From Thalia democratica (Eukaryota): a stretch of 64,000 bases of DNA. Under the pieces are notes generated by a model. It was not told where the DNA came from and made no database searches. It saw only the letters and a program-made list of their open reading frames with translations. Where the stretch lies: the NCBI GenBank assembly GCA_965202585.1, contig OZ241828.1, positions 39,742,001 to 39,806,000 of the forward strand, given 5' to 3'. Within the stretch, counting starts at the first letter, position 1. Every line of letters starts with the position of its first letter. Shown here piece by piece: positions 4,548 to 59,622 of the stretch. The position numbers and the translations under genes are program-made.

Positions 4548-4665
4548 GTTTATTGAACAACAAAAAAAAAAGAGGCTTAAAACATTTGGTTTTAGGACTT
4601 GGTGCACAAAGAACCTTTTGGTTATCTAGTGCGAGTCGCTTACCTTTTAACGTCTTGTCCAGGAC
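4548..4665 (-). repeat. Copy of the ~120-nt structured dispersed element (internally deleted)
   Basis: Reverse complement reads GTCCTGGACAAGACGTTAAAAGGTAAG...GATAACCAAAAGGTTCTTTGTGCACCAAGTCC...TGTTCAATAAAC, matching the other copies. Confidence 0.85.
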
Positions 4666-5254
4666 TACAACTGGGCAAAGTCAAGACAGAGTTTTCTAAG
4701 TCCCTACCCCCATCAGGCAACAAAGTTACCAATACATTATTTGTTGAGATTGTAAACTTAAAAGTGTTTACGAAATGGTGTTCGAACTTAATTTTTAATT
4801 ACATCAAAACAAAGTTTTTTTAATTATCTAGTTTAGCATTTAAAGTTTTACTGGATATGAGTAAAAACATTTAATAACAATTAAACAGTCACACCCCAAT
4901 GATTTCTACTTCAAACAACATTTGTAGCATTTTGAAGTTGTTAACAGGTAAGCGGGTAAAGTCTATAGAAACACTAAACAACAAAACTTTAAAATAAAAT
5001 GTAGTTTATAAATTCAGAGTCAAATATTATTTTGAAAAGAGTCATAATTATTAGAATTATCTTCAAAAAAAGCATATAAAAGAGCCCTATATTATTAAGG
5101 ATATTTAAATATGTTTTGAATATCTTTAAAGAAAAACTGATTTGCCATGTACCATTCTTCACTGGTTTAATTAACTAGTAAAGTTAAATTAATAACAACT
5201 AAAAACTTTTTTTTAATTAAATACTACTTTAAAATCACTTTTAATAAATTTGTC

Positions 5255-5522
5255 TTAAGTACATTCATAAATCGATAACTGTATCTTCTAAAATCATTAT
5301 ATATTCAAGTTGAAGTGATGTATTTTAAATTATTGAATCGATAACAATTCGGATAAGAGTTTTTAAGAAATTGCTTAAAGCTTTAAGTACATGATTTAAA
5401 TACAATCATAAATCGATAACTGTATCTTCTAAAATCATTATATATTTAAGTTGAAGTGATGTAGTTTAAATTAAAGAGTCGATAACAATTCCGACATGAG
5501 TTTTTAAGAAATTGTTAAAAGC
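5255..5522. repeat. Two-copy tandem duplication, ~130-140 bp unit
   Basis: TTAAGTACA...CATAAATCGATAACTGTATCTTCTAAAATCATTATATAT...GTTGAAGTGATGTA...GATAACAATTC...GAGTTTTTAAGAAATTG occurs at ~5255 and ~5383. Confidence 0.85.
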
Positions 5523-7046
5523 ACAATTCAAAGGTTTAGTCTACCGTGCTTAGTATAGTAAAAATCATGACGTTATCGGTTTAACCATTAGTAAATAAAC
5601 TTTAGAAAATCTTAAAGCAAACCGATCAAATTATTATTCCTATAAATTCAGTTAGTTGAGATGAACAATAAACGTAAACATAGAATTCTGATGGCTTGTA
5701 ATTTTTAAGGTCAGTCTGGTTTGGATATTTGCTGAGTCAAAAAAAAAAGCTTTTTTTCATGTAATTTATATAACTGTTAAAATTTTATTTTTTTATTTAC
5801 TTTAGCATTTTTGGGTAAGGTGTGTAAAGTATAAGGGTATAAAAAAACTAATATAAGGCTTTAAAAAAACTTCCTAACTCAGCAAATATGCAATTTAGCC
5901 TGACTTTTAAGCAAACTTTTAAAGTCTGATTGTTATATGAAAGTAAAACTTCAGCCCAGTACCGAGTATAGCTACCAATTTCTTTATGTATAAAAGTTTA
6001 TTTATAAAAAAATAACTTGAGCTTTTTTGGTAATAAAGCTTATGACCTCGATGTGATTGTAGAAACGTTGATCCCTGATATAAAAGTTGTGCTTATAGTT
6101 TATGAACTATTAAGTAGTACAAGTCCAATAAATCATTTATAGGGAGAATAAATATAAGAAGTTAAAGGTTCTTTCTTACAAAAACATGTTTATAGTAGGC
6201 TACAATATAAACTTTATAACCGCTTAAATTTATAAAAATTTTACATAGCTTAAAAAATTACTTAAAATAACCAGTATTAGTTTTAACAATTTTAATAAAT
6301 TTTATTTGTAGTTATACTGTATGAAACGTATAAAAACTTGCTATTTTTATTTATTTATTAAATTTACAGAAAAGCATAGTATTTTTTTAAGAAAATTTAA
6401 CATGCTTTGTGACTGTTTAAGGTAATATACTTTTACTTAACAAAGTATAGTGTAATATTGAACTTTTGATAATAGAAGTTTTTTTTTGTAAGTTTCGTTT
6501 ATTAACAATTAGTTAATGTGATTACACATGCCTTATAAACAAAAAAAAATATTTATGTAAATAAGATAACGAGTCGTTCATCTTACATAGTTACATTCAA
6601 AAAAAACATTTACTCTGGTATTGTTAAATATATTGCTTGACAGTTTAAGCAAGTTAAATGTTGATATATTTTAAGTTAAACTAATAAAAACACTTTAAAT
6701 TTTGTTTTCATGTAGTCTGATAAGTAGCTTTTTATAACTGGAAATTCGTACCAATGTTCTTATTTACACTTTAATATTTAAAAGAAAAAATTGACCGCAA
6801 TTTTTAAAACAAAATAAAAACTTTTGACATCTAATAGCTTGATTAATGTCTACTTTAAAATTGAAAAGGAAGCAATTCCTTAGTATTTAAAATAAAGGCT
6901 AAAGTACGTACAACAGCACAATATGATCTAACTAGTAGAATAATATTTCGTATATTCTATGTTAAACTTTAAGTTAATAATGTATTTAAACAATATACTT
7001 GTTTATAATGGCAAAATAGTCTGAAGATAAAAAAATATTTTAATAC

Positions 7047-7156
7047 ATCCTAGACAAGACATTAAAAGGTATCCGTGGTGTGCGACTCGATAACCAAAAT
7101 ATTTTTCGCTCACCAGCTCCTAGGACTAAATATTTTGAGCGCCTTTTTTCAATAAA
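7047..7156 (+). repeat. Copy of the ~120-nt structured dispersed element
   Basis: TCCTAGACAAGACATTAAAAGGTATCCGTGGTGTGCGACTCGATAACC...CACCAGCTCCTAGGACTAAATATTTTGAGCGCC...AATAAA. Confidence 0.9.
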
Positions 7157-9212
7157 ATTAAAAATAGTAGTATCTTAAAAGTATAAATAGCCTAATCTAT
7201 ATTTTTAAAAAAGTTGAATTAGTTTCTTCTAGAAAAAAAAACAACATTGTGCAAATTCAATATTCTACTAAACTTTTTTTTTCTTAAAAAACCAAACTTA
7301 CTTGATAAAAAATAGTTTAATGTTAACAAAATATTAAGATCAAAAATTAACCAGTTGTAAGCTACTAAAAACTTTTCAAATGAAAATAAACTTTAGCTCC
7401 CTTTTATTTAAAAGGATCTGATATTTTGTTTTATGTGTTAGAAGAACAATATTTTTTTATGTAGTTTGTTTTACTCTTATTTTCTTAGTTTGTTGATCTG
7501 ATACTGTAAATTTTATTTAGCATAGAGAGTATTAAACCTTACAGTTACAAACACAATATTTTTTGTTCAAAAATGCAAATGTTTAATACTTTTTGTGCAC
7601 TTTTTTTACATTTGGAAGTTATTTTATAATTTTTAAATTAATTTTGTATCTACTTAGAATAAAACATTGAGACAATAACAAATAATAGCCACATATTTTT
7701 TTACTTTTTTTATTGTAGATAGGTCTTTTTAAAGATAAATCAAAATGTTTAGCGATCTGTTTTACAAAATTTAAGACCTATACTTATTATCTCTTTTAAT
7801 TAGTAAAGGTTAGTATAAAATAAACTAAGTTGCGGTTCAACTCAAAAACTTTAACACTATATTTTTTATCCGTTATAGTTTCGTTTCTTAGCTCATACAC
7901 ACGTGCTACCATAAAACTACAAATAAATTAACTTTAATGATAATATTACAGCAATAACTTTCTTCTTATAGTATTTTTTGTCGAAACAACCTATGACAAG
8001 TTTGTAAAACTGAATTATATTTACAACTATTCCAATTACTTTCATTACTCTTTGTATGTTTGCTGTCTCGCACTTAATGTTTCTTAATGTAATACTTAAC
8101 TCAGTGAAGTTTAACACATTGAAGTTTGATTTAGTTACCAGTACTCCAAGGATTTACAGTATGCTTATGGAATATTAAAATATCTAAAATCTTTACAAGT
8201 CATTCCAGAAGTTCCATTTGTTGTCACATAAACTGATTTTTGTTTTATTAGTTTTTTGTTGAATGTTATCATTTTACTGGTGTGGGTTTAGTATGTCTAA
8301 CCTGTTGTTGTGCTTTGCATTGTGACAAAAAATATATAAAAGTTTGGGAACGCGCAACAAAATAGTATTCCTAGCTTAGCAGTATCTGTTACATCAGTGC
8401 TCTCATAAATACTGGTTGACAAATGTTCTGAAGTTTCAATAAACTAATTTTGCCTGCTTTCGCCGAATCAAACTTTTTTTTTTTTAAATGCGAGCATTAA
8501 AAATAGTTGCTACTAATATGGAAAAACAATGCTTTAGTTCAGCTTTTTCATACAAACTTTTGAAAGCATATGATTTCTATTTTTTCTTCAATTAGTTTTT
8601 TTACCATACAGTTTGTCTCGGTAAACTTTACAGTTCTGTTTAAATTTACTTAAAATACTAATTTGCAGTTTTTAGATTATTTTTTTTACTGTGCTGTTAA
8701 TGTTTTGTAAAAAAATAATGGCAAAATAAAACTTTGATTGCTCATTTCTTTTTTGATATTGTCGCTTTACGTTATATTAACTTTCAACTCATGCAATTTA
8801 GCTACATACAAAACAAAATTGTGTACTGATAAAAAAATTATTTAGTGCTTAATAAAAAAGGTTTGAGTCTTAGTTATATCGGTAAGAATAGTATTATCAT
8901 CGGAACAGATTTAGTTCTCTTTTTTTTTGTTGCAAAATAATATTTATTAAAAAAAAAATAATTTTGTTTTAGAATACAAAGTAATTTATTGGAATTAGTA
9001 AAACGTTTATTTTTGTTTTATTAATATAATAAACACAATATTAATCTTTTTTTTCAGTTACATTCACATCTTTTACATTACAATAAATGTAAATAACTAA
9101 AGTAATGAATTAATTAGTGTTGATGCTTTAAATAATGAAAGTTTAGTAACAAAGAGAGTTTAATAGTTGATTTTAATTAAGTTAAACAATTTAAATAAAA
9201 AAATTAAACACT

Positions 9213-9329
9213 GTCTTGGACAAGACGTTAAAAGATATCCGTAGTATGTGACCCGATAACCGAAAAGTTCTTCGTACACCAGGTCCTACAACCAAATATT
9301 TTGAGCGTCTTTTTTATCGTTCGATAAAC
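9213..9329 (+). repeat. Copy of the ~120-nt structured dispersed element
   Basis: GTCTTGGACAAGACGTTAAAAGATATCCGTAG...GATAACCGAAAAGTTCTTCGTACACCAGGTCC...ATATTTTGAGCGTCTT...CGTTCGATAAAC. Confidence 0.9.
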
Positions 9330-9900
9330 TATATGTACTGTTATATGTTTGTGAAGTTAGCCTAACGTAGTTGATAATGTTAAACTCGTTGTCAACTATA
9401 ATATAAAACATTTTCAAAACGTCCTCTTTAATGGGGTATAAAAACAAGCAATTAAAACTAACCTTGCATATTAGATAAAAATTAAAACACATTTTACTTT
9501 GTAATGCATGAGTTTATAAACTGGAAATTACGAACATTATCTTTTAGTTCTTAGTTTAGCTATAGTTTTTAATTCACCTACAGATAAAAAGTACCAAGTT
9601 ATTAATAATCAAAATAGAAACTTGAGAATAACAAATAAAATTAGCGTCCAAGACAACTAGCCAAGATTATCAAAAAAAGATATGAATTGTAAAAGATAAC
9701 TGTTGTATTAACTTTTACTTAGATATTTTAATTTTGTTGATTTTTTATAACTAAAGCATACTACTTTGAGGGTTGTAATGATATATTTTTGTAGTTTTTC
9801 TGTCTAAGGTTATAATTCGTTTATATGTCTCTTTTTTTTCTTAAAAATTTTTGTTTTATTTTTAAAGTTTAAATCTTTGAACTTAAAAACATAATACTTG

Positions 9901-10018
9901 TTAGCTCGTAGTAGATTGTGAAAGTATGTGGTATACGACTCGATAACCAAAAGGTTCTTTCGGACACCAGGCCCTTAGACTAAACTTTATAAGCGCTTTG
10001 CTTTATCGTTCAATAGAC
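9901..10018 (+). repeat. Copy of the ~120-nt structured dispersed element (variant with TTAGCTCGTA 5' end)
   Basis: GGTATACGACTCGATAACCAAAAGGTTCTTTCGGACACCAGGCCCTTAGAC...TATCGTTCAATAGAC; the 5' part is shared with the copy at 32447. Confidence 0.85.
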
Positions 10019-10509
10019 ATTAATGTTCAAGATTTGTGGTCTACTGGATCCAGGATCAGGATGCAGTGGAATCTTGATTTCAAAAACAGATCAGTAATTT
10101 AAAAAAAAAAGGTTTCCGGACAGATCCTGATCAAATAAGTTAAGCTAAGCAACTTTTATTTATATTTTATCAAAGCAAAAGTGTTTATTTTAAAAACGAA
10201 ATCAATTTTTAACAAAACTCTCCATGAAAAGAAACACGTAAATCTTAATTTATAAAAATTCCATAGTATTGGTACTTTTACAGTTTGTATTTTTTGTGTA
10301 TTGTAGATTTTGTTTTTTGCGGCTGTAAAGTTACGAACATTTTCAAAGAAAAATTCAAATGTACATTTTTTACTTGCACTTTACTAGCTTATGTATACCT
10401 TTATTTGATGAATAAAAAATATTAACTTACTGATACATAATCGTTTTTTTATGACACGCTAGTCTTATTTTTTCTATAAAGTTTTAAATTTTCATAATAA
10501 ATTAAAATT

Positions 10510-10810
10510 GGCAAAATATCCGCATTTACTAATAAGTCCTGTTCTGAAATTACCTAATACTTTTACACCTGCAAATGGTATTCCTAATTTTTCCATATTA
10601 CATCAAATATAGATTTTTTATATTTCATTTACAGGGATTTTCTGTAGGATCTCCAATTTTAATTTTCTTTAAATATCATTCTCATTTAAGTTTGCAATGT
10701 TGGTATAAGAAGTTAGTTTACTTTCTTAATTTTTTTTAATCGTGAAACTAAGCATAAGTTTATTGAATATACTTTTGAGATTCATTGCTGTTGAACCAAT
10801 GTAATTCATA
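10510..10810 (-). mobile_element. Degenerate Penelope-like element (GIY-YIG endonuclease remnant)
   Basis: Minus-strand translation NYIGSTAMNLKSIFNKLMLSF...LEILQK...CNMEKLGI...NFRTGLISKCGY with stops. This parallels the PLE pattern YIGST..FK.RY.NH..SF...W.IL...C.LC..EK...LN.R.EL.SKCRH. Confidence 0.65.
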
Positions 10811-10994
10811 TTTCACATTTCTGGGTAATTAAAGCTTAGTAATGTGAGGTATTTACCTTTTAGTAGGTAAATCTTTTTTATTAAAAGAAAATCAATGTTT
10901 TATTTATACAAAATAAAATTTTATTTCACTTCTATTCAGTTTTTTTATCTAGTGTCTTATTGATTAACTTGGAAATTTCATATTTTGAATTAAG

Positions 10995-11075
10995 CAATTT
11001 ACGCTCAGTTTCAACCCGCGCACAATTTACACCCGAACAATTCCAACCAGCAAAGTTCCACCCAATCAATTCAAG
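10995..11075. repeat. Degenerate short direct-repeat array (CAATTYMACCCG-like units)
   Basis: About 5-6 imperfect units (caatttacgct, cagtttcaacccgcg, caatttacacccgaa, caattccaaccag, caaagttccaccc); architecture resembles the 29603 insertion. Confidence 0.5.
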
Positions 11076-18404: not shown

Positions 18405-18948
18405 TTTTATAGAATTAAGTATAAATATCCTTTTAAATAGTTTATTTTGTTAGCTTTCAAACTAACTAGAGTAAACAAAAAATTTATGTTCCTTAAATAA
18501 ATTTCATATATTAAACATACATACTAGAAATGTACTAAAAAATACTACTAAACCAGACTATAAAATACTTGAGCAAAACCTAAAATTTTGAACAACATAA
18601 TTTTTTTAATTTATAAACACTTTATAACCTTTAAAATTTTATTAATGATAAGTAAAACATTCATAAACTATAGAGTTTTTAGGACTAAAAATAGTTATTT
18701 AAGTGCATTATACTTTACACAAACCTTTCAAATTGAAGTATTTAAACACTTATGTTTAAAATTGTCTTTATCAACATGGTCACCTAGTAGTAATTTTAAT
18801 TGTAGATTATTCTAATACAAAAAAAAAACTTATTTATAAATTCCTAGAAAAGCTTGCCTAAAAATTATTTTATATACTCAAAAAATTTACTAATTTATTT
18901 TATTTGGTCTACAATGCAAGTTACAAACAAGTGAGTTCAAAAAAATGT

Positions 18949-23249: not shown

Positions 23250-23367
23250 TCTTGGACAAGACCGTAAAAGGTATCCGTAGTGTGCTATTCGTTAACCGAT
23301 AGGTTCCTCGTGCACCAGGTCCTAGGACCATATATTTTGAGCGTCTTTCTTTTGTCGTTCAACAAAC
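23250..23367 (+). repeat. Copy of the ~120-nt structured dispersed element
   Basis: TCTTGGACAAGACCGTAAAAGGTATCCGTAGTGTGC...AACCGATAGGTTCCTCGTGCACCAGGTCCTAGGACCATATATTTTGAGCGTCTT...TGTCGTTCAACAAAC. Confidence 0.9.
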
Positions 23368-24342
23368 TTTAATTGTAAGAACAAAGGAATTGTTATGTGC
23401 TGAAATTAGTATGTTAATATTTTTTGTGAATGTCGTAAATAACCAAACTTATGGCCTTGTAACTGGTTTGTCAGTTTTCAACTTATAAATATAAGTTTTT
23501 TGTATTTCAATGATGAAACTAAATGGTTAGAATATTGTAAAATAAATAGAGAATTTAGATAAATATTGTAAAATTATAAATAATAGTTATAGAAAACAAC
23601 TTAAAAATTAGATTTTTTAACTAGTAAAAAAGACATTTAAATATTACCTAAACTTGAAACTATAAACCAAATAAAACTTATTAACTTTTTATACTAAAAG
23701 TACTACGAAAATTATCACTTCGATAAACTGTTTTTTTTTTGTAGATTATCGAAAATTAGCATAAAGAGTTTGAGTATCAGAGAAGATCAAGATCAGATAT
23801 AAATATAATTTTATGGTTTCGTTTCGAAACACCGTTTTCTTATTAAAAAATAAAATGAAATACTTAGACAAAAATTTCATCATCTAAAGTCAAGTAAATG
23901 AAAAAAGCTAAACTCAAAAATAAAAAATAAAAATTGCGCAATTTTGAATCATTCTGCTCTTTTTAATTCTATTAAGTGTCCATTTAAAAATTTAAACTAG
24001 TTAAGTACATCTATTATCGTTTATAACTAGCAGATTCTCCAAAATATTAATGTAGCTCTGCAATTTAAACATTGAATACTTAATAAACAGTTTTTTTTTT
24101 AATAAAAAGTTATGCTCTAGTGACTTTGTGGCTGTTTATCAATTAAAATCTGGTAGCTATGATACTAAGCAAGCTTTTTTACAGTTAGAAGTTGTTACCT
24201 AAACAAAATATCATTATTTTTTTACTTATTTGTCATGTAGATAAAAGACTAAAACAATTGAGAATACTTTTGACAAAAATGTTTATTCATGCAGTTTTTT
24301 TTTTCATTTAAAGCTGTATAGTTTTAATTAGTATAAGTACTT

Positions 24343-24430
24343 GGGTGTGCGCCCGATGTCCGAGAGGTCTTTTCCGATGCCCACGTTCTTGGACTTAAGT
24401 ATTTATCAGCATCTTTTCGTTTCGTTTTTT
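24343..24430 (+). repeat. Diverged partial copy of the ~120-nt structured element
   Basis: GGGTGTGCGCCCGATGTCCGAGAGGTC...GTTCTTGGACTTAAGTATTTATCAGCATCTTTT; same motif order, GNRA loop retained. Confidence 0.6.
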
Positions 24431-26431
24431 TTGTTTAATAAACTTACAATGAGTACAACAGCCTTTGTTGGAAATTTAAAGTTAAATTAATAATACTTTT
24501 ACTTCCCTGAAAAATGAAGAAATAGAAGATAAACTGTTCTGTATTATCAAAAAATTAATGTCAAAAATAGAATTTACTTTACTAAAATGTAAAAATTAAA
24601 GTCTTAAGTAAATACTAACTGTATTTAGTTTATTTTTTCAACCTGAAATCCATGAATAAGATGTAAAAAGTTCTATTGTAACATGCAGAAGTCTTATACT
24701 TTTCAGTATAAACATTGCGAATATAAGTTGTCAGACATAGAACAAAAAATGACCGATAAGTATTAAAAAAAAAAACATTAAACAATCGTGAATAATAAGC
24801 ATCAACTAAGATGATAGCTTTGAAAAGCTTTTTTATATGCGTAGATTGTTTTAAAATATGCTTGCACAATTTTTATGCATGTATGTTTTTGTATACATAA
24901 TCCTACAAACAGCGTTTTTATTTTCTGCTTTATTTTTTACATTCTGACGCTAGAATTGTTTAGATTGTTTTCAAAGTGAAAAGTAGCTAACAAAGAGAAA
25001 CACTTTTAATAATTAAAATTTATAAAAGTCAGCTTCTATATTCTTTTCTCTATTTTTTCGTTTCTAATTAGCACAGGCGGCTAAATTCTAATCTAAACAA
25101 ACCTTAACATTATATTAAATAAAAAGTTATAGTACAACTTGCTTTTAAACCCGGCTAAAAATAAACTAGTCAAGTTATACAGTTAGATTGCTTTGTCAGC
25201 TTTTTACTACTGTTAAGTTGTAAGATAGTTGTGTAACACCAACAAGTGTTAACTACTTTCGTCAAACTCGGTTTGTGTATTGTAAAAGTACAAATAATTT
25301 TGTGAAAGTATTTTGTCAGAGTTATTTATCTAAAAATTTTCATAAATTAATTCTTTTTATAATTAGTTTTCTAATTTTAATTTACAAATTGATTATTTAC
25401 AATTTGTATTTATAACTTTTTTGTGTAAAAACTTGCCTAAATAGTACAATAAAGCTTTAAAAATATTATAAACTTCTGGTATGTATAAATCTATCCGCTT
25501 ATAAAACTATGATCCATTTGAGTTTTTTATTTTTTTATAATCTTTGGGTTAATCCGACTTGTTAAGTAATAAAATATTGTTCCTTTTTTTTTTTCCTAGA
25601 TTGCAACTCTTAAACTATCGTAGTTAAATGCATAGTCAAATGCATAGTTAAAGACCTTAGTCAAAATCAAAACTAACAGCGAAACAGAATACGAAAATAG
25701 TAATGAAGTCTAATAACTAAACTGTTTTGCTTTAATTAAAGGATTAAATTGTACTATGGATTGTTTAATATAATATATACCGATAATAACAACTAAAACT
25801 TGCAAAGGTTGTTTTAAATTATTATTGTTAATTTTATTGGTGCAGCAAATTTTTAAGTAACTTCTTTGGTTTGTTAAAACTATTAGTGAAAACTATAATA
25901 CTAGATATTGTATAATTTTAAACATTATTCTAAATAATATAAACTTAATTTTGTCATCAACGTAGTAAATTTTATTTCTAACTACTCGATTGATTATAAA
26001 CTATTTAGAAAATCTTTAGCATAAGTATTACAATTATAATAACGATATTTTTATAACTCATTTAGTATTACTATAAAACAATTTTGTTCAAAATTTATAA
26101 AATTTTCTTACAGCTGCTAGATAAGATAAATATTTGTTTTCTTAACAAACGCAAAGGACAGCAAAACTAAAAAGAAAGGTCTAAGTCAAAGTTTTTTTTT
26201 TTTAAACAGTATAATTGGAACGGAAGCGAAAACTATTTAAAAGAAATTAAAACTAAAAAAAACCTCTTAATTAATCATTATTAAAATTTAATAAACGGTT
26301 AGTACGCAAAACTAAAATAATAATATTTTGTAAAATTTAATTTCTTAGAACTTATAAAATTTATTATGACGTATTCTCTTTTTAGTCGTTGTTGCAAATT
26401 TTTATTCAAAAAATAAAAATCAATCAGAGTC

Positions 26432-31572: not shown

Positions 31573-32446
31573 ATAATTTTTTCGTTGTGTAAGAGAAATA
31601 CTTAAACAAAACCCCTGAAGTTTTTTATTAAAGCTACGTTAGTTAGATATTTAATTTAATTAATTGAAAAAAAAATCTATAGCTTAAGCCAGTATTTGCT
31701 GTCATCTGTATGTAGTTAGAAACATTTAGTTAATTATTTTGAATTATGAGACATTATCAAACAAAAGAATTCTTATGCAGGTCGTTGAATATTTTAAAAT
31801 TTGTATCAAAGAAACTCTCAAGTAAAAAAGTTTTAACAAAGCAATCTCATGATTGCACCAATGCTTATTAACAGGTCACAAATAACTTTAAACCATATTT
31901 GTTTTATTATAATATGCAGGCAAATCTGTAACTTTTAACTGTCAATAAACGTTTGTTTTACATAAACTGTTTAAACTAAAACACAGTTTATATGACAAAG
32001 GGTGAAGATTCCCACCTCACCAACTAATCATTCAGCTTTCTCACCGCTAAAAAAAGTTGGAAAAAGTTAAGATATATTTCAAAGCTTGTATTTAGACTAA
32101 ATAAAATGTTTTGGTTGTTATTAAGAATAAAAAAAGTATTTCTTGTATAAAAAAAACATTTTCAAGTTATTCAGTAATTTAAATTATTTTAATACCTATA
32201 TACTTTTAAAACTTTTAATATCATACAAATGTTAAGTGTAACTTCAACTACTTTAAATTTTGATCAGATGTTAGCCTTTCTGTCCTATGTGCAAGTAAAA
32301 TATTCATAAAAAAACTTATAGTTATTATATTAAGTTCATTATTGTAAGATCATAACTTGGTCAGTTTTCGTTTAATTTTCTTTCATTTTATTGATTGTTT
32401 TATTTTCAAACCTCTAAAAAGTTTAGAATATAAACATTAAGTTCTA

Positions 32447-32571
32447 TTAGCTCGTAAGAAACTGTAAAAAGCATAAGGTGTACAACTCAATAACCAAAAG
32501 GTTTCTTCCTAGTTCCTACACAAAGTCCTTAGACACAACTTTTTGAGCGTTTTTTCTATCGTTCAATAAAC
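32447..32571 (+). repeat. Copy of the ~120-nt structured element (TTAGCTCGTA variant, small internal insertion)
   Basis: GGTGTACAACTCAATAACCAAAAGGTT...TACACAAAGTCCTTAGAC...CTTTTTGAGCGTTTT...TCGTTCAATAAAC. Confidence 0.8.
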
Positions 32572-33747
32572 AATATTATTATAAAATTTTGTATAATGTT
32601 TATGCAACAGAACTAAAAACAATTAAGTTTAATACTTAAAACGTTTGAAGTTGTAAAAAGCCTATTTTTAATACATTAAGTACTTTGCAAATTTTTGTTG
32701 TTATAAACTAATAAACTTATTTCGTTTGGATTTCTATTTGCTAATATATAAGCAATATATGTATTTTAAGCAAATAATGATTGGTCACTTTTTTGTAATA
32801 TTACAAATGATTTTTCTATATGATGAAGGTTAGTGATAATCAAAATATTAATTTACATAGTATGCTTTTTTGGTACTTATGAAACAAATTATTAAAAAAA
32901 AACTAATTTTTTATATACATTAATACTTTTTTAAACACTGCAAAAAATGAACCAACTTTAATATATTGCATTAATACCATGCAACATAAATGACTCATAA
33001 AATACAGTTCGAGTATTTACCTTACGACAAGGAAAACTTGTGATAAAAGGAAGTTACATAATTTATTGCGAAAAAAGGCAAGCTTATGTAACATACTAGC
33101 AAATTGATTTCATTATGATAAATTCAATTGCTACAAAATAGAATATAGTTTTAATACAACAAATACAAAAAGTTTAGCTAATGAACAATGTTTGTTAACA
33201 TATTAATTTTCTTACAGCTGTTTTTTAAGGAACTTTTTTTCTACAGATAAATAACAATAAACGATTAAAAAAAATTTTTTTTAGTTTATTTTAATATAAG
33301 TTTTTTATAAGTATTTTTTTTGTGACTTAATTAAATAAAACTATTTTGAAATATTTTTTAAAATTGTATAACTATACTTCAATATGCACTTGTTAATTGA
33401 TACAAAATTATATTATATAAAATAGTTTTAAATAATTACATTTTGTTAAGAATTTTTGAAATAAGTCGATTATAAGTGATGAATTATGTAATTTAACAAT
33501 TTTGTCTAATAATTGACCCCTTATGTTAAAATTAGAAACTGTATTAGACCAAGTATAGATTATAGAGCTGCTCTTCAAGCAAATCTTTTAGACTTAAAAC
33601 AATAAAAATTGCATTTTTATAATTTCAACTAATATTTTAATATCTTCTTATAAAAATTTCCAACAAAATCAAAACTTATCTACATTATTTTCACAGTGGT
33701 AGTTATATATATCTAAACTTATGCTTTTTTAGATTAAATATACCAAA

Positions 33748-43902: not shown

Positions 43903-45230
43903 TAAAAAGTTTATTTTGTGTATTTTAGTTTTATATATATATATATATATAAATAAAACACTAAGTTTTCAAATACAATTGTTTCACTAATTGCAAAAAG
44001 TGTATACTTTAGCCTATCTAAAGTTTTATGATTATCAACAATGGATCTTAGTTTATGGAAAGTTAATGTTTAAATAAAAGTCTATTATGGTTATTAAGTC
44101 TGTGAAAACTTCAGCGTTAATGTAGTTATCAAACATTACTTTAAGTTTAATTTAACATAAAGAATTTAATTTAAGTAAGATAAAGACTTCTACTTAACTA
44201 CAAAATCTGTTCAATTTATTTTAGAGCAAATAAAGAAAAGTGGAATAAAAATTTAGTTCTCTTAAAATTACTTAAGAGAAAACTAAGATTACTTATAAGA
44301 ATTTGACACATATATTACTAAAAAAGACAAGAAATTAATAAATTTGAATGCATTCAAATGAAAAATAATCATTTACATAACTTTCTTATTTAGTGTAAAT
44401 AGTATTATATTAGAAAAACTATGGTAAAAAACAAGATTGTATAAAACATGTCTATATAAAGTCTTAGAAAGTTTTAATAACATTAGTCTTAATTAAAATA
44501 TATAATTCTATTTGATATGTGAAAATTAAAATAATGGCTTTGTTTAGGATTTATAATATTTAAAAATAAATTATATGATTTATTATTCATAATGTATTAT
44601 TAAGTGTAACCGTAAAACATCGTATATGTTCTGTGAATAACTTTTATTTAATAATGTTCAACTCAAGCTTCAGATAAAATAAAATATTTCGTGTTATCTC
44701 CTCAGTTGCTTAAATAGCAATAAAAAAACAGGTTGATTTAACTTATATAGCTATATGATAATCAATGTAACATAATTAAAGACAAGAGTAATTCGCAAAA
44801 ATTAATTAGAAAACAAGAAGTAAAAGTAAACAAGCAACTTATTTACAATCAAAACAATACTTTTAAATTATATTACTAAAAATATTATATTTTTGATTTG
44901 TAGACTATTAAAAACAATAAAATGCTTCACTCCTTTAGTAAACTATAAAAGATCTTCAGTTTTTAAATATTTTTATTTCAATAAGAGTTCTACTTAAAAA
45001 AAACTAATTTAAGAACTGAATGTATTTTTAAATTTACTATATGAACAAAACATTGTATTGTTTTTAACAATCTGCAAAATTAAATATAATTTGTCTCCTT
45101 ATAGCTACATAAATTGAGAACTTTAAATTGGTCAATTTAAAGTAAACTACAATGTCATACAAAAATATTTGTACTACAGTTAATAAACACAGTTTCGAAA
45201 ATAAAGCAACATTGTAATCAACGTATTATT

Positions 45231-45344
45231 ATTTATTGAAGGACAAAAAAATTTCTCAAAATGTTTGGTCCAAGGGCCTGGTGTACAAAAAACCTTTCGG
45301 TTATCGAGTCATACACCAGAGCAGTTAAACGTCATGCCCAGGAC
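45231..45344 (-). repeat. Copy of the ~120-nt structured dispersed element
   Basis: Reverse complement GTCCTGGGCATGACGTTTAAC...GGTGTATGACTCGATAACCGAAAGGTTTTTTGTACACCAGGCCCTTGGACCAAACATTTTGAG...TGTCCTTCAATAA. Confidence 0.88.
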
Positions 45345-45479
45345 CTAGTATTGTTTTTAGAAAGGTTAGGTTTCCTAATAAGATATAATTGGCTTCTAAT
45401 TATGTCTATTTGTAAATGCCATGAAAAGTGTTTATTGTTTTAAACCTGTTTAAACTAAAGTTGTTTGCATAATCAAGGT

Positions 45480-45962
45480 TAATTTTTTGGTGTTGTAGAA
45501 TAGATGATCGTTTCATAGCATTCAATGCTTTGTTTTCAATGATTTGTTTTGTTTTTCCGACAATTTTACAAAAGTTTTCTATACTTTTTTTGACATATGT
45601 TCCTTTATTTTTTACTAAATTTTTGAAATGTAGTTCAGGTATATCTTGCTACACAGAAGGATTAAACTGGAATACTATCATACTTTTTGTAAATTCGAAT
45701 ATCAGATCTATACCACTGAGTCTTAATAGCGGTCTATACGTGAAAATGACTCTAGGTTTTACTGTTAAATAAGAATTTGCTGATCAACTGAATAATATTC
45801 TTTTCAACAATTCTTTAATTCATAGTAACAAACAATAACTTCAATTTCAACTGATATTTGCGAATCGCTCTTGTCTTAAGCCAAGTTATATTGATTATCT
45901 TGTGGTTATATAAGCTTTTTAAAACCTGACGTTTCATTGCTATGTAAACAACTGAGGAGATA
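45480..45962 (-). mobile_element. Degenerate Penelope-like element fragment with an eroded hammerhead half upstream
   Basis: Minus translation VKPRVIFTYRPLLRLSGIDLI...KSMIVFQFN then frame-shifted C...KEH, matching the PLE linker/GIY-YIG start; GCAATGAAACGTCAGG (hammerhead 3' half) at ~45924-45940. Confidence 0.6.
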
Positions 45963-48900: not shown

Positions 48901-48965
48901 TGTTTTGATAGTATTTTTACAATTTTTTCAGCTATTTGTTTCAGTTTTTGTAAAAGTTTTATAAA

Positions 48966-51900: not shown

Positions 51901-54632
51901 AAAATCTATTTATATACTAAACTACACAAACATTGATACAAAAAACACAATAGTTAAGTCTTAAATGTATAAAAAACTTTAACCTACCTCTATGGTTAAC
52001 TTTTAACAATCAGACTAGTATTTCCAAAAGTGGGTAATATCGCCTCTTTGAGATTGATTTTGGATATTAGGGGCAAAAACTAGTGAGTTGGAGATTAATT
52101 ATATGTGTAAGTACCTAGTAAAGAGACGATTACTAATAAATTAAAAAGGACTTTTTATTAATTATTAAATAGGTGTTTTAGTGAAAATGAGTATGGAAAC
52201 CCTTATTAAACACATAAATTTGTCTTAGGAAAGCAATACCCGTAAGACGCCTTCTGAGGTAAATGAATTTTTATCACAAACAAAACTAATAAAACCTTTT
52301 GCAACCAGAATGGTCGATGGAGGTGGCGGAGTTGTGTTTGGAGTTTAGAAACGAAGGAGTGGTGGGCATTGACGTGGCGTGCGCTGGCGATGAGGAAGGA
52401 CACATGATTCTCAACCACAAGGAGGCTTTCGATGTTTGTTGTACGAAAAATATAAAATGCATTACTTGACTGCTAACTTTATTTTTATAGTTAATTTAAA
52501 AATATAAACTGTTTTTTCAGTTTTGCTTAAAACACGGTATTGGAAGGACGGCTCACGCCGGTGAGAAAGGTAGTTCCAATGAAGTTAAAAATGTGAGAAT
52601 TGTTTTATTGTATCAAAAATATTGCAGTAAGCTTTTAGCTGTAAAGAAACAGAATCTTGAAAACTTATTTGCATCAAATAAACTTTAAAATTTTACATAA
52701 AAACACACCAAATATATAGAAAAAATATAACAACTTTTATTTTATTTATTAAAAGTATGTTTTTACTATTTGTGTTTTGGTTTAAAAATTATGTTTCTTT
52801 TTCTTTAACAAAAAATATTTTAATAGATTACAAACTGTTTAAAATGTTTTCATACTATTTTATTCCTGGTCTAACTTTATTTAGTGCTTATAACAATTAG
52901 ATTTTTAACGACAATCTAAACTCGTCTAGATTTAAAACAAGTACTGTTTATCAAAATTAAAAGTTTAGAAGTCACAAGTATAAAAACATGAAAACTTCAT
53001 ATTTAAATTAACTTAAAATAAATAAATTTTCAATTAGTTTAAATTTATTTTTAAATTTTTTAATTTTGCAAAAAAGGCAGTGGAAAAGCTACACGTTCAA
53101 AGGATAGGACACGGTTACCATGTTTTAGATGATGAAGAGCTTTACAAGAAGTGCATCGAAGATCAGATTCATTTTGAAGTTTGCCCGCTTTCAAGCTATT
53201 TGACAGGATCAGTGTCCACAGATATGACTGTACATCCCGCTGTTAGGTTTATAATAATAACAATTTCAGTGCAACTTATAATTAAAACAGGTGATACTTT
53301 TAAATTGCTGAATTAAGTAGATTAATATGAAACAGTGTCACACGTATCTGGAGAATAAGTAAAAGTATGGTATACTTACCCAAAAGTTAAAACTTAAAAG
53401 TAAGTTTACTGGACGAGAAGTAGCTCTATAAAGTTTAACTATCTTACATACACAAGCACTATTTTGTCTAATAACTTTTTTTTTCTTTTTATTATGAATA
53501 GTTATTTTTTTTTAGTAAGTTATTTATGATCAGTGAAATATTTTTAAATATAGATTTCAGGCTGACGGTCTCAAGTTTTCTCTGAACACTGATGACCCCG
53601 GAGTTCAACAAAGTTCGATTATAGATGATTACGAAATTGCAACTAAAAGTTTTGGTTTTAGTAGACCAATGTTATATCAAAGCGTAAGTTAATCAAAACT
53701 ACTTTTTTTAATATTCTAAAACCTGTGAACTAAACTTAAACAGTGTATTTTAAATTTAAATCAAAGTCTTTAAATTTATCGTTGTTACAACTGTTCATCT
53801 TAAAAACAATTAAACTTAATTGTTTTTATCTTAAGTTGAATTTATTAAAATGCAGCGTTAAGATATCAAAGTTATTATTTTTTAAATTTAAAGTTTCAGG
53901 TCAAAAATGATACCAGTTTAGGTTTTATCTAGTTATCTTTACTTGGTCTTATCCAAAAAATTTATATTTAAAAGTAGTAATAAAGTTGTCTCTTTGAGAT
54001 GAATTAGTTTTATATTAAAGTTTTAAGCCCACGGAATTACTGTAGTTGAAATTTTATAAAGTTAAAAACAGTTTTACATATTTAGTTTAAAGTGCAACAA
54101 TTAGAACTTTCGATTTGAGTTCAATGATAAGAACAACTACATTTTAAAGAATTAAAGTAGCCATCTAATTATGTTTTGTACTAAATGATTTTTAAATTGT
54201 ACAGTGGTACAAGTTGTATAATCCTGATTAAATCATTTAAAAGTTTATTACAATACAATGTTTCTACCTACCATACAATACTTTTTGTTCAATTATCAGT
54301 TTAATTATAACTAACGCTTCCAATATGCCGAATCATTAGTTTGTAGGAAGTATATATTATTTTCCTTGATATGAATTTGAGAATTACTTATTTTTCTAAA
54401 TTTAACATCACAATAAAGTTATTCAGTACACAAAACATAAAAATACTAATTTTATGAATTTTAATTTAAATATTACCTTATAACAAAAAACATAATATTT
54501 TATTAGAATATACATGCAATGGAAGCCGCATTTGTAGATAAAGTAACAAAAGACGCTTTTCTAGAGGAGCTGAAAAATGAATACCAAAATATTAGAACTA
54601 AAAAGCAAAATGAAAACTGTACTTATTTGTAA
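48966..54632 (+). CDS. ADA: Adenosine deaminase (ADA1-type), 10 exons, 368 aa
   Basis: Exons 48966-49007, 49520-49581, 50369-50494, 50822-50944, 51350-51480, 52309-52433, 52521-52592, 53077-53246, 53554-53683, 54507-54632 total 1107 nt, phases consistent. Motifs VELHCHLDG, EMRYSPH, RSILCC, RTAHAGE, RIGHGY, EVCPLSS, SLNTDDP. Exon 1 (MSLPTTLTKYEFSK) is the least certain. Confidence 0.95.
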
Positions 54633-57600
54633 GAATTACTTACTTATAAAACATGTTATTACAATTATTACCACTGTACTAAATACTTTAAAATTTTTAA
54701 AATTGTGCTAAAAATTTATTAACTGTATTATTTTGATGTATTTTTTAATAAAAATGTTTTTTAAACAGAAGTTTTACTTTACATAATTATATATTGTATA
54801 TGAAAAATAAAAAATGTAATTTCTCGAATAAAGTAAATGTATCTCTATTAAAACGTTTTATTTAGAATGTTAAATTAAAAGTGAATTACTTGTTTTGTAA
54901 AAATAACTATGCTTGATTTAAAGAATAATTTTATCTTGCGTATTGTAGAGAATTTCTGATTTTATTTATATAAGGTCGCTGATGTTTTGTAAATAAATCA
55001 AAGCAAAGCTTGAAAACTACTTTTTAACTTTTATTATATACATGTCTAATGAAAAAAACAGTTAACTACTTTATGATTTAGTATGCCTTTTTATCTAAAG
55101 CATTGTTTATAAATTCAAAATTAGAACATGTTTAGTTTAATTATATTTAAATAATGAAAATAAACTTTCTATGCATAAAACTATTAACAAGAAGTATATT
55201 ATTTTTAGTTTGATTTTTTGTTGCTCAAACCAATGGTTTCAAGTTTGATAGTTTTTTTTTTATAGTTTGCGCACAGTAGATCAATGAGAAAAAACTTCAA
55301 TGCACAGTAGAATACTTGTTTAGTTTTTAGCATTGTACTACAAATGCGATTCTTATTTAAAATCGTAAATTAATATGGAATCTCTTAAAGCTAACTAAAA
55401 ACTACGAGAAAAACTTTTCATGATAGAACTAAATATAACTTTGTATTAAAATCAAAATTTCATTTAATAATTTTAAAGCGTGTGAATAAACATGGGATTT
55501 TTTGTAAAATCAAAACATTCTATATGCTTTCTCATAAAATTTTCCCAATTTCCAAAACAACATTGTTTATTTGTAGGAGTTAATTTAATTCCGATGCGTA
55601 TACATCGGCGTTTGTCTTTAAAATACGCGTTAGTTTTTAAGTTGTGCTGTGTGCCGTTTGCCGTCTTAATTCACGATGAAGTTCGCATGATCAACGAATC
55701 ATCAAGTTAAACTCAACATCTAGTTTTGAGCTACGAGTTTAAGAACATCGAACATCTAGTTTTGAGATTAAGAATATCTAATTCGTTCGTCCAAACTGTT
55801 GGTATATATTTATAATTTTTATGATTGTTAATACTTTCGACAGTTTTTACTTGGGTAGTGATTTAAACAGTAAACAGTTTGTTTCAGAATTGTTGTAATT
55901 AATATATTAATAATAAAGTACATCGAATCTTAGTGTGTTTTATTTTATAAGTTAGGAATAAGTTACCTTAAGTAAGACAAATATTATTAAGTTTAGTACT
56001 GTAAGCTACTTTTAAGTAAAACTCGTAGTTTAGCTAAGTACATGGAGACCACATATTTAAGATCATAAACATAACCAGTATTATAAATATATCTTTGTGG
56101 TTATAACTTAAACTTATTTCTACAATATTTTCATTACCCATAAAACTTTCAGTGCAGAGTAGAATAGTTTCTTTTTAATTTGTTGAAATATTAGCCGAAC
56201 AAAAAAGTTGTAGAAAATGAAGATATTTTAAATTACAGTCTAAAACATGACAAGAGTAAAGAGCTTTTATTTATAAAAGAAGTTAAGTCTAGACATATGT
56301 AAGTGTACTTATATAAAACCTTAAAGGAAGTTACTACCCACGCTCTACAAATGAACAAAATGAAAGGTTATTGAACTCTGAGGTATATATTTTTTTATTT
56401 TCAATATTAAATAATGGTTAATTTACTGAGTTAAGAGCTTATAATTTAATTTTTCAGGTAGAAAAACGGTGAGATTTATTAAAAAATTGTTTAAGTTTAA
56501 GCTAAACTAAAAAGATATACATCTTCATAATAAATACTTCTTAATAAATGAAAATATTAAAAATGGTCAAAATAGTATGTGTTTTTTTTGAATATATTGA
56601 AGTTTTTGATATAAATGTATCTTAAACAATCAAAAATTTTAGGTGTTTAAAAAAACTGTTTATTAAAAAAAAATATTTTACAAAGACAGAATTATATCAG
56701 CAAAGAAAAAAACTAGCTTAACAGCTACTGAAATATCAATAAAAAAGGTTCCTAAATAAATAGTCTTAAACTAAATATAAGAAAAGCACGATTCATAGTT
56801 TAAAAATGATGATAAAAAGTCTTAAATTTTTAAGCAGAAAAATTTTTGTATCAAGCAAGTATAACTATCAACGTTTATTGAGTAGTAAAAAAATAGTAAG
56901 CTTTACAAATTTCATATAATATAATTGTTCTTAATAAGTTCAAGAGAAGTAAAATAGATGTAAGTTTTAATACTGTGAACTGACGTAATTTGTTCAAAAC
57001 AATTTTTTCAAAAGTAATTACAAAAATTTTAATTTTATAAGTAGTTTTCATTTAATATAAGGCTTGCTTCAAGTGTTTGAAAACATGTGTTACCTCTCAC
57101 AATCATAGTTGTCATAGTTTGAGTTTTTGTATATTTAGCAATTGTAAATACTATGAATTTATAGCGTATATACTTATGATTATACTTTATTGCATAATAT
57201 AATTTTAATAGTTTAAAATGCTATAGAGTATAAGGTTTATGACTGCTAGATTTTTAAGATTTATTTTTTAACAGTCCATATTTAAAGACAAGCTTACAAT
57301 CAATTATGATTTTGTAACCAAATTGTAACTACGTACGTTGGTCATCCACATGAAGTTGCAACTGATGTTAAGATGGAATAACCAGAGAGACTGTAGATTA
57401 ACCTAACTCAGTCGGAGTTTGAAAATAAAACCTAAAAACTAAATTTTATCTTAGGGTCATTTGTTACTACTATACTTTTACGAAAAAATAAATGTGTTTT
57501 ACACTTTTTTACACCACAAAAGTCGATTAAATTTGATAAAGAAAAGTAAATTAAAGATTATTATTATGTAAATAAGTAGATGCAAGATTCACATTCTAGA

Positions 57601-59556
57601 TCTAGAGTAAGCTCGTTTTTCTTAAATTTTGTACAATGACACTAAAGTTGCTAAATACTTTTTAATATGCCTCGTTTATATCTTTTTGTTAGATATATGT
57701 TTTTAAAACAACTTATGTTACAACAAAAATAGTCGCAAATATATATACCACTGAATCAGTATAGCTGCAAGTCAATAAATTATTAATTATAATTTAAAAA
57801 TTAACCCCAATAACTTAAGAAAAAAATAAGAAAAGTTTTCAAAAGAAGCGAGTTATTATAAAATAACACTTTTATCTTAGTTATACTTCTACTAAGGTCT
57901 GTTTGAATAAGTGTGTTATAAAGACGTGAAGTAAGCAATTGTGGTTAAACTTTAAAAGGTACTTACTACGTCCTCCTCTGCGTGTGCTTTTTTATTGGTG
58001 ATAACTTTACTACTAATATGTGAAACACTTATCGCTTTTCTCTTGACATTTCATATTTATCAACACAAAATAAAATACAGTAATTGAAAAACAAAAAAAA
58101 CTGTTAAAGTTAACCTGCATACAAAAAATAAAAACTAACAAAATCTATACAGGAAAAATATACACACAAGTAATTTAAAACAATAAGATGACTTACAGAT
58201 GTTGTTCCAAAATTTTAGGAGAAACCAAAATACACCTTAGAAGTTTTTGAACCGACTGGTTTCATGCCGTTTACAAATGAGGACTAACTTAACTCTGTTT
58301 CTTACAAACTTAATCTTACCAATTAATTCCCACAAATAAGCTTTTAAATTGTTTAGTGTACTTAGATGCCAGAAAAACTACTCCTTTGACTTGTTTATTT
58401 TAACGAATTACTTACTAAAACTTCACATAATGTTTGTTTATACAAATACTTACTTTTTTATAATTTTTTTTTTAAATATTGAAGAATTATATAGTTAAGT
58501 CTTATTTCATTACACACTTTCCTAAGATTTTAAATAAATTTTTTGATCATGTAAAAAGTAATCTTTTAAGTATATTTTCAAAATTTATCTAACTTTGCAG
58601 TAGATAAAATTGTTCCTAAAATAATAAGAGTACAATTAGATAGTTATATTTGATACTTTAGATAGTTATTGCGTTTATGGAAAATTAAAACAGAACTAAA
58701 GGTAAAACTTTAATAAAAAATACAAATTTTTGCTCATGGTCTTAAAGTTGCATTTGACAAGAATACACGTACTATTTTTTCTACCTTTACTATAATTTAT
58801 ACCGCAGTGCATATTAAGTGTTATGAGCAGGTCTCAGGCTGCTACGAATCTTCAAAAATAAAATCACACAGCAAATTACAAATTTGTTTTTGACAAAAAT
58901 AATAAGTAGGACCTGATTTGTTTAATAGACTTGAAACTTCAATACTGCGTTGAAAATAATTTGACACATTTAAAGCAGGTCTTAAACTTAAGCATAAAGT
59001 TAATTGTGACTTTTTTTATATAACACCTTTTTTAAATTTCGTGTAAAACTGAACGTTTTAAAAGTTATTATTTTTTGCAGTAATTTATTAAAATTAAGGA
59101 TACTTTTTAAATCAAAATCCAGCTTGGATCTGAAAATTTAAAGCTATTAATGATTAATTATACTTCAAATACAATTTTATGTTGTTTATTACCTATGATA
59201 GGGGTGGGTAACTTTACTAACCCCTAAATACCCAAAGAAGTGAATATGTAATGAAGTCTATCGTGTAATTTAAAAATGACTAAAAAGCTTAACAAAACCT
59301 AAAATTAATTTGAGAATGTAAATCCTTTAAAATTTTCGTAAAAAAATTTAAATAAAAAACCTATCCTTTTAGGCAAAATGAATTTGACTATAGTGTTGCT
59401 TTATTTAATGCTGTTTTTGGTGTTTATACGTTTGTATTTAATTAGCTCTATTAATAAGTGTTTTAATTAGTTTTGTGTTATTAAATTTGTATGTAATTAA
59501 TATTTGTTTTTGATGAATACTACTGTTACTTTAAAAGTTAAATTTAACTTTTATAT

Positions 59557-59622
59557 ATTCGATAACCGAAAGGTTTTTCGTTCTCAGATCGTTGGACCAA
59601 ACTTTTTTGTCGTTCAATAAAC
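59557..59622 (+). repeat. Partial copy of the ~120-nt structured element
   Basis: ATTCGATAACCGAAAGGTTTTTCG...GTTGGACCAAACTTTTTTGTCGTTCAATAAAC. Confidence 0.75.

What the first reader, a model, noticed from the sequence alone, without database searches (positions are those of the whole stretch)
4548..59622. A ~120-nt element with fixed ends and a conserved multi-stem fold occurs nine times in the window
Seen: copies at 4548(-), 7047, 9213, 9901, 23250, 24343, 32447, 45231(-) and 59557. By-eye consensus: GTCYTGGACAAGACGTTAAAAGGTATCCGTGGTGTGCGACTCGATAACCGAAAGGTTCTTCGTACACCAGGTCCTAGGACCAAATATTTTGAGCGTCTTTTTTTGTCGTTCAATAAAC. It folds as a three-way junction: outer stem GACGTTAAAA/TTTTGAGCGTC; a 9-bp stem GGTGTGCGA/TCGTACACC capped by an internal loop and AACC-GAAA-GGTT (GNRA); and a palindromic hairpin GGTCC-TA-GGACC echoed by the 5' GTCCTGGAC. 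Five copies share the same 5' boundary, which argues against random 5'-truncated LINE tails. Two copies carry a second 5' variant (TTAGCTCGTA). No TSD or ORF was seen. There are hints of compensation (outer pair of the GNRA hairpin A-T to G-C at 24343; GAC/GTC to AAC/GTT at 32447), but most changes look like CpG decay. It also has a donor-like AAAAG|GTATCC about 22 nt from the 5' end and an Sm-site-like ATTTTGA after the last hairpin. Inference: a high-copy structured RNA-derived element (SINE-like, possibly from a spliced-leader/snRNA-type RNA or an unclassified ribozyme), or a Helentron-type non-autonomous element. I do not recognise it as a hammerhead, HDV-like, twister or tRNA-derived family.
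Basis: partly seen in the sequence, partly recalled or inferred. Interest (0 to 1): 0.75.

Follow-up and report, generated by a model that had tools for sequence, protein, structure and literature searches.

The report
Short retroposon sharing a LINE's tail
The repeated 120-letter element is a short parasitic jumping element whose last 90 letters copy the folded tail of a long jumping gene (LINE) in the same tunicate genome; it is an apparently undescribed member of a well-known kind, not a new class of RNA.

Summary
All nine copies were recovered, and the genome holds roughly 20,000-90,000 related tails. The nine are not one thing. Five (4547-, 7047, 9213, 23250, 45227-) are about 118-nt units with a sharp 5' end (GTCCTGGAC...). 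Three (9807, 24335, 32395) are 5'-truncated 3' ends of LINEs. One (59544) is a truncated tail of unclear type. The LINE has intact copies of about 5.8 kb that are 98% identical, with ORF1 and an endonuclease + reverse-transcriptase ORF2. Its last 90 nt are 88% identical to the short element's last 90 nt. So this is a SINE-like non-autonomous retroposon that borrows the structured 3' tail of a stringent-type LINE, as in the eel UnaL2/UnaSINE pair. The 30-nt head matches no tRNA, 5S, 7SL, snRNA or ribozyme model. It is not the animal's spliced leader, and its donor-like GT is absent from the second subfamily. How the RNA's 5' end is made remains open. Unchecked first-reader notes suggest the scan has seen this family on other DNA of this genome.

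The parts
4547..4665 (-). SINE-like copy, subfamily A, full 5' head, with an internal rearrangement in the 5' strand of stem P1
   Evidence: nhmmer model positions 1-118, E 1.2e-24; CM 58 bits
7047..7161 (+). SINE-like copy, subfamily A, with head; the 3' terminal hairpin is partly deleted
9213..9333 (+). SINE-like copy, subfamily A, full length (head 9213-9242, LINE-derived tail 9243-9333)
   Evidence: 86-89% identical to 40 genomic copies
9807..10022 (+).
   Evidence: homology to other LINE-B copies starts upstream of the tail and at different points in different copies
23250..23371 (+). SINE-like copy, subfamily A, full length
24335..24447 (+). tail of another LINE lineage, with a G-C closing pair on the capped hairpin as in the young LINE
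   Evidence: CM 51 bits, E 2.2e-6; alignment A3; 22 weaker relatives in the genome
32395..32575 (+).
45227..45344 (-). SINE-like copy, subfamily A2 (head GTCCTGGGCATGACG.., shorter linker, no GT after the head)
   Evidence: 89-92% identical over its full length to 40 genomic copies
59544..59626 (+). 5'-truncated tail (starts at the capped hairpin, internal deletion); cannot be assigned to SINE or LINE
   Evidence: nhmmer positions 41-120, E 4e-10; CM 44.5 bits

Best explanation
The ~118-nt unit is a non-autonomous retroposon (SINE-like). It has a 30-nt head of unknown origin joined to about 90 nt derived from the 3' end of an endonuclease + reverse-transcriptase LINE in the same genome. Shown: the shared tail; its conserved fold (a 9-bp stem P1 carrying an internal loop and the AACC-GAAA-GGTT cap, a small hairpin P2, and a terminal hairpin P3 made of TTGAGCG and CGTTCAA around a T-run, followed by single-stranded AATAAACTATA); the sharp ends; one filled/empty insertion site; a very high copy number; and young LINE copies with intact ORFs. 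Inferred, by analogy with tested stringent-type LINEs such as UnaL2 and ZfL2: the LINE ORF2 protein binds the tail's stem-loop on the short RNA in trans, nicks AT-rich DNA, starts reverse transcription at the terminal (A)ACTAT unit (sometimes with slippage), and copies up to the RNA's 5' end at G1. In the short element the head probably pairs with the P2 region and closes P1 into one long rod. How the short RNA is transcribed, and how its 5' end is set, is not known. A T6-9 run inside the element argues against ordinary Pol III transcription.
For: Family and boundaries. LINE link: variant copies extend >=1.5-3.2 kb upstream with varied truncation points. The upstream part encodes RVT_1 (E 1e-34) and Exo_endo_phos (E 1e-10). 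Two ~5.8-kb copies are 98.2% identical with ORFs of 274 and 1124 aa and end in the homologous tail. Tail consensus of the short element versus LINE-B: 87.8% over 90 nt; head 52%, not significant (shuffle p 0.47). Structure: 88.4% of cells paired against 30-50% when partners are slid; 16 cells changed on both sides, reached by 0 of 500 shuffles; G-C to A-U swaps in P1, the cap helix and P3. RNAalifold finds P1, the cap and P2 unaided. The sense strand folds with z -4.1, the antisense with -0.7. A metagenome contig carries the identical 20-nt loop and cap motif inside a different, perfectly complementary 7-bp stem. Insertion: L008:1501-1620 interrupts a repeat that is continuous in L060. One copy has a 17-bp target duplication plus an inverted copy of the head. 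5 of 33 copies repeat the AACTAT end unit. Known mechanism: PMC4176376, PMC1636434.
Against: No recognised Pol III head: ARAGORN and Rfam find no tRNA, 5S, 7SL or snRNA. An internal T6-9 run would stop Pol III before the 3' end. Target-site duplications are not significant across 37 copies (p 0.13), and the one filled/empty pair shows only 0-6 bp. No RNA data could be obtained, so no transcript has been shown. The short element's tail is closest to the old LINE-B lineage (7% mean divergence from consensus), not to the young lineage (74%), so current mobility is unproven. The head-P2 pairing has only a one-sided supporting change (G.U in 36 A2 copies).
Confidence: 0.82

Rival explanations
1. 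The 118-nt units are only 5'-truncated copies of a LINE subfamily with a truncation hot spot, not a separate element.
For: The 3' 90 nt are LINE tail. LINE copies truncated at many points, including within the last 200 nt, are common. MAFFT can align the head loosely with LINE-B sequence at 52%.
Against: In 40+ copies the flanks are unrelated immediately upstream of G1. The head is not significantly similar to the LINE at that position (p 0.47). Two subfamilies (A, A2) keep the same 5' terminus while differing in their diagnostic changes, and each has thousands of first-look candidates. No held copy continues upstream into LINE sequence.
Confidence: 0.07
2. The family derives from, or still includes, a functional small RNA: a second spliced-leader or Sm-class RNA, or a self-cleaving RNA that cuts at G1 to define its own 5' end.
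For: The fixed 5' end lacks a known promoter. The RNA-like strand folds unusually well (z -4.1). There are a donor-like AG|GTATCC and a U-rich stretch.
Against: No Rfam family matches even at E<=10, including ribozymes, snRNAs and SL RNAs. The GT is absent from subfamily A2. The U-rich stretch is paired in P3 with covariation and comes from the LINE. The animal's leader is a different sequence. The outer stem has probability 0.05 and no support outside subfamily A. The long 9-bp stem is unlike the 3-bp P3 of HDV-like ribozymes (textbook knowledge).
Confidence: 0.06
3. It is a non-autonomous DNA transposon (Helentron-type or MITE).
For: It is short, non-coding, high-copy and rich in palindromes. 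Target duplications are weak.
Against: It shares its 3' end with a reverse-transcriptase LINE. Truncation is 5'-only. The ends are asymmetric without terminal inverted repeats. The 3' end unit is sometimes repeated, and one copy has a 5' inverted duplication; both are typical of target-primed reverse transcription.
Confidence: 0.02

Closest known systems
Eel UnaL2 / UnaSINE1 and zebrafish ZfL2 (stringent-type L2 LINEs and their partner SINEs)
   Same: LINE and short element share a conserved 3' tail with a stem, an internal loop or bulge, and a loop, followed by a short repeatable end unit and no poly(A). The stem covaries while the loop sequence stays fixed. This fits recognition of the stem in general and the loop specifically by ORF2 (PMC4176376, PMC1636434).
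   Different: UnaSINE1 has a tRNA-derived Pol III head; this element has a 30-nt head with no recognisable source. The tail here has three helices rather than one hairpin, and a T-run. Mobilisation has not been tested.
RIME/ingi and NARTc/L1Tc of trypanosomes (short partners built from LINE ends)
   Same: The short non-autonomous partner consists largely of sequence from its LINE and lacks a tRNA, 7SL or 5S head.
   Different: Those partners also share the LINE's 5' end (in L1Tc/NARTc an HDV-like ribozyme and promoter). No similarity to the LINE 5' end could be shown here, and no ribozyme model matches.
SINEs with heads of unknown origin
   Same: A short retroposon with a LINE-type tail but no recognised Pol III promoter module.
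   Different: Recalled from general knowledge of SINE catalogues such as SINEBase; I checked no such catalogue, and neither Dfam nor Repbase was available.

Membership tests
SINE (strict sense) | Short, non-coding, dispersed in high copy number | tested here: met
   118 nt; 4003 and 2652 first-look candidates for subfamilies A and A2; 2763 exact copies of a 20-mer
SINE (strict sense) | 5' head derived from tRNA, 7SL, 5S or snRNA with an internal Pol III promoter | tested here: not met
   ARAGORN finds none; Rfam finds none at E<=10; an internal T6-9 run would terminate Pol III
SINE (strict sense) | Insertion by retroposition with target-site duplications | tested here: inconclusive
   One filled/empty pair with a 0-6 bp duplication; one 17-bp duplication; overall p 0.13
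Stringent-type LINE/SINE pair | 3' tail shared between the LINE and the short element | tested here: met
   87.8% identity over 90 nt between consensus tails; same 3' terminus AATAAAC(T/A)AT
Stringent-type LINE/SINE pair | Conserved stem-loop in the tail, maintained by compensatory change | tested here: met
   a different stem around the identical loop in a metagenome contig
Stringent-type LINE/SINE pair | Short repeat units at the extreme 3' end | tested here: inconclusive
   5 of 33 copies carry a second AACTAT unit; some are followed by (TA)n or (TAA)n
Stringent-type LINE/SINE pair | Mobilisation of the short element by the LINE's ORF2 through the tail | not testable with these tools
   Needs a retrotransposition assay
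L2/CR1 group (Jockey superfamily) LINE | ORF2 with an AP-endonuclease and a reverse transcriptase | tested here: met
   Exo_endo_phos E 1e-10, RVT_1 E 1e-34
L2/CR1 group (Jockey superfamily) LINE | Placement in the clade by RT phylogeny | not tested
   No named reference sequences were at hand. The architecture (coiled-coil ORF1, weak PHD at the start of ORF2, E 0.0017, below cut-off) resembles 'L2 subgroup 5' of PMC4120745. This is a lead only.
Spliced-leader RNA | The leader is the sequence found on trans-spliced RNAs; the GU donor is conserved; the Sm site is single-stranded | tested here: not met
   The leader seen on a LINE copy is the Ciona type; the donor is absent in A2; the U-rich stretch is paired in P3. 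cDNA ends could not be examined.
Known self-cleaving ribozymes (hammerhead, HDV-like, twister, hatchet, pistol) | Match to the family covariance model | tested here: not met
   No match in the window at gathering score, nor in a clean copy with flanks at E<=10
Helitron/Helentron | 5' TC and 3' CTRR termini with a subterminal hairpin; a Rep/helicase partner | tested here: not met
   Termini are GTCC... and ...CTATA; the partner is an RT LINE

The most novel reading that the evidence does not exclude
The 30-nt head is not a passive leftover. Together with the LINE-derived tail it would form a unit that sets its own 5' end without a Pol III promoter. That could work by self-cleavage (the head-P2 helix and the 12-21/88-97 helix cross, in the strand order of an HDV-like double pseudoknot), or because the head is a captured small cellular RNA. 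Short elements could then be released from any host transcript that runs through them.
Probability: 0.06. Interest if true: 0.7.

Novelty: new member of a known kind. Interest (0 to 1): 0.3.

Why it matters
It explains a very abundant repeat (tens of thousands of copies, of the order of 1% of an 800-Mb tunicate genome) that generic annotation would probably leave unclassified. It also links that repeat to a LINE whose copies still have intact ORFs. The tail gives a clean natural example of a stringent LINE recognition structure: the loop and cap sequence is fixed, even in a contig of a different sequence context, while the stems covary. That makes it a ready substrate for testing how ORF2 proteins recognise their RNA outside vertebrates. 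The one open point is how a short element with no recognisable promoter and an internal T-run gets a precise 5' end. For gene annotation, the element brings an AATAAA signal and a donor-like GT into introns and flanks.

Tried and rejected
- Rfam at gathering score on the whole window, and at E<=10 on a clean copy with flanks: nothing relevant. ARAGORN: no tRNA.
- Target-site duplication statistics on 37 full-length copies against mismatched flank pairs: not significant.
- Head versus the LINE-B sequence at the same place (shuffle test), and versus the whole young LINE on both strands: no meaningful similarity. A 12-nt resemblance to the 5' UTR of one leader-tagged LINE copy (L078:2266-2280) is too short to count.
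- Test for covariation in the head-P2 pairing by genome-wide pattern counts. Subfamily A2 has G.U (36 copies) rather than G-C (1 copy), so there is only a one-sided change. A supposed third subfamily with an A5-T76 swap is only 8 scattered mutants.
The outer stem is absent from the LINE tails.
- ORF1 against solved structures: no informative match.
- A CM search of all held DNA for more distant tails found no lineage that nhmmer had missed.
Majority consensus was computed only for the ~140-nt non-coding tails, inside a script.
Full report
**Observation.** The window is AT-rich (about 25% G+C). blastn with the copy at 9213-9330 finds seven more copies at E<=4.5e-4. A 19-mer of the core occurs four times with up to three mismatches, against none in shuffles. 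The alignment of the nine (A1) shows a common block ending in ..TCGTTCAATAAAC.

**The family in the genome.** The window's genome (802 Mb) gives 4003 first-look candidates for the 9213 copy. The 40 that were scored are 86-89% identical, and nearly all cover positions 1-118. Thirty loci aligned with 50-nt flanks show unrelated sequence right up to GTCCTGGAC and after AATAAACTATA. Conservation falls to background one or two bases after CTATA. A second subfamily, A2 (the window copy 45227-45344), has 2652 candidates. Its best 40 are 89-92% identical over their full length.

Exact-word counts over the whole genome are 2763 for a 20-mer of the core and 220 for the 34-nt start of subfamily A. Only 4 of 25 unselected tails in my sample carry that exact 20-mer. 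That implies about 17,000 tails. Density in the held DNA extrapolates to about 86,000, but the sample is biased towards repeat-rich DNA.

**The variant copies are LINE ends.** Copies 9901 and 32447 share about 50 more bases upstream with each other. A genome search with 9780-10025 gives matches that start at many different query positions (28, 37, 53, 72, 119). Their loci stay homologous to one another for up to more than 1.5 kb upstream, and in a larger fetch for 1.7, 1.9 and 3.2 kb. The upstream part contains decayed reverse-transcriptase motifs. Better copies have a long open frame with Exo_endo_phos (E 1e-10) and RVT_1 (E 1e-34).

Two copies, L077:2203-7968 and L078:2273-8070, are 98.2% identical over 5.8 kb. 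They have ORF1 of 274/264 aa and ORF2 of 1124/1125 aa. They end in a tail plainly homologous to the short element..GGGTATGCAACTCGATGACCGAGAGGTC.. and finally ..TTGTTCAATAAACTATTA. ORF2 has 173 relatives at E<=1e-10, all of endonuclease/RT type. ORF1 is a coiled coil with a small C-terminal domain, and ORF2 begins with a weak PHD match. That resembles 'L2 subgroup 5' of PMC4120745. I did not place the LINE by phylogeny.

**What the nine copies are.**
- Five are short units with the head: 4547-, 7047, 9213 and 23250 (subfamily A) and 45227- (subfamily A2).
- Three are 5'-truncated LINE ends: 9807-10022 and 32395-32575 (lineage B), and 24335-24447 (another lineage).
- One, 59544-59626, is a truncated tail that cannot be assigned.

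**Head and tail.** The consensus tails of subfamily A and LINE-B are 87.8% identical over 90 nt. Against the young LINE the figure is 73.6%. The first 30 nt are 52% identical to the LINE at the aligned place, which is no better than shuffles (p 0.47). The head matches no tRNA and no Rfam family even at E<=10. Copies lie 8-17% from their consensus in the unselected sample, so most are old.

**Structure.** Consensus tails of four lineages (A, A2, LINE-B and a relative of the young LINE) keep all nine pairs of stem P1. They show G-C to A-U swaps at two pairs and several wobble intermediates. The cap helix changes A-U to G-C in the young lineage and at 24343. The 3'-terminal hairpin P3 (TTGAGCG with CGTTCAA around the T-run) changes G-C to A-U in the young lineage.

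On an alignment of 22 referenced copies (A3):
- 88.4% of cells are paired, against 30-50% when the partners are slid.
- 16 cells are changed on both sides, which 0 of 500 shuffles reach.
- The covariation score is 0.176, against at most 0.086 for slid versions.

RNAalifold finds P1, the cap and P2 unaided. The sense strand of a clean copy folds at -37.8 kcal/mol (z -4.1), while the antisense strand has z -0.7.

It costs the P3 hairpin and gives -26.2 kcal/mol, against -34.0 for the alternative in which the head pairs with the P2 region. Its pairing probability is 0.05. The head-P2 pairing is the thermodynamic favourite (probability 0.7-0.9). It has only a one-sided supporting change: G.U in 36 A2 copies, G-C in one. 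A supposed further swap is only scattered mutants.

**A relative elsewhere.** One scan of public metagenome contigs for the 20-mer found a single locus, sampled twice. There the identical loop and cap motif sits inside a different, perfectly complementary 7-bp stem (GGGACAC with GTGTCCC). It is followed by a T-rich stretch and ..GAATAAG. A fixed loop with a freely covarying stem is what the tested model of tail recognition predicts: stem recognised in general, loop specifically (PMC4176376; PMC1636434).

**Insertion.** An all-against-all comparison of the held loci found one filled/empty pair. The copy at L008:1501-1620 interrupts a repeat that is continuous in L060 around 2434-2443, with a duplication of 0-6 bp depending on how the TA-rich junction is read. 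Copy L018:1501 has a 17-bp duplication separated from the element by an inverted copy of the element's first ~20 nt. L004 has a partial direct duplication of the start. Such 5' rearrangements fit template switching at the end of an RNA that really begins at G1. Over all 37 copies, flank matches are not significantly better than for mismatched flanks (p 0.13). In 5 of 33 copies the end unit AACTAT is repeated.

**Rejected readings.**
- Spliced leader or snRNA. A LINE copy (L078) starts with TTCTATTTGAATAAG, the Ciona-type leader. The element's head is a different sequence. The GT after it is absent in A2. The U-rich 'Sm site' is the paired strand of P3 and comes from the LINE.
- Ribozymes. No model matches. 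The head-P2 helix and the outer stem would cross in the strand order of an HDV-like fold, but the 9-bp stem between them is unlike that family, and the outer stem is unsupported. I keep this only as the low-probability novel case.
- Helentron or MITE. The ends are asymmetric, truncation is 5'-only, and the partner is an RT LINE.

**What is not known.** The source of the head and the way the RNA is made remain open. The T6-9 run inside P3 would stop Pol III before the 3' end that every copy carries. So the template is probably a Pol II or read-through RNA whose 5' end is set by an unknown step.

**Verdict.** This is a real, very abundant, structured repeat. It is a new member of a known kind: a SINE-like partner of a stringent-type LINE that shares its covarying 3' tail. 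The published salp repeat surveys I read list only unclassified SINEs and L2, RTE and I LINEs, and do not describe this family (PMC5174732, PMC10686999). I did not establish the species of the window. First-reader notes of this scan on other DNA of the same genome (s1-301666, s1-301414) probably describe the same family; I could not check them.

Noticed in passing
L078:2250-2265 (G000:C6, about 14611250): A full-length young LINE copy begins with TTCTATTTGAATAAG, the Ciona-type spliced leader, joined to its 5' UTR. The sister copy L077 lacks it and starts about 12 nt further in. The LINE RNA seems to have been trans-spliced before it was copied back into DNA.
   Followed up: partly
L077:2203-7968 and L078:2273-8070: Two LINE copies on different chromosomes are 98.2% identical, with both ORFs open (274 and 1124 aa). 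This points to recent activity of this lineage. The 3' UTR is about 1.55 kb long and contains internal duplicated segments (L077:6466-6596 and 6642-6744).
   Followed up: partly
L018:1478-1522: An inverted duplication of the short element's first ~20 nt lies directly upstream of a full copy, inside a 17-bp target duplication (a head-to-head junction centred on GTCC/GGAC). L004:1618-1640 shows a partial direct duplication of the same end.
   Followed up: partly
L079:1760-1850 (= L080:1589-1679 minus strand), JGI metagenome contigs: A non-coding eukaryote-like contig with 43% G+C carries the same CTCGATAACCGAAAGGTT loop and cap motif in a different stem. The organism is unknown. No ORF of 80 aa or more lies within 1.7 kb upstream.
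   Followed up: partly
L019 versus L022 (G000:C1047 and C7): The same short-element insertion with identical flanks occurs on an unplaced contig and on a chromosome. This is either a segmental duplicate or an uncollapsed haplotype.
   Followed up: no
window 24335-24447: This tail lineage has only 23 detectable relatives in the genome, far fewer than the others. It shares the G-C cap pair with the young LINE.
   Followed up: partly
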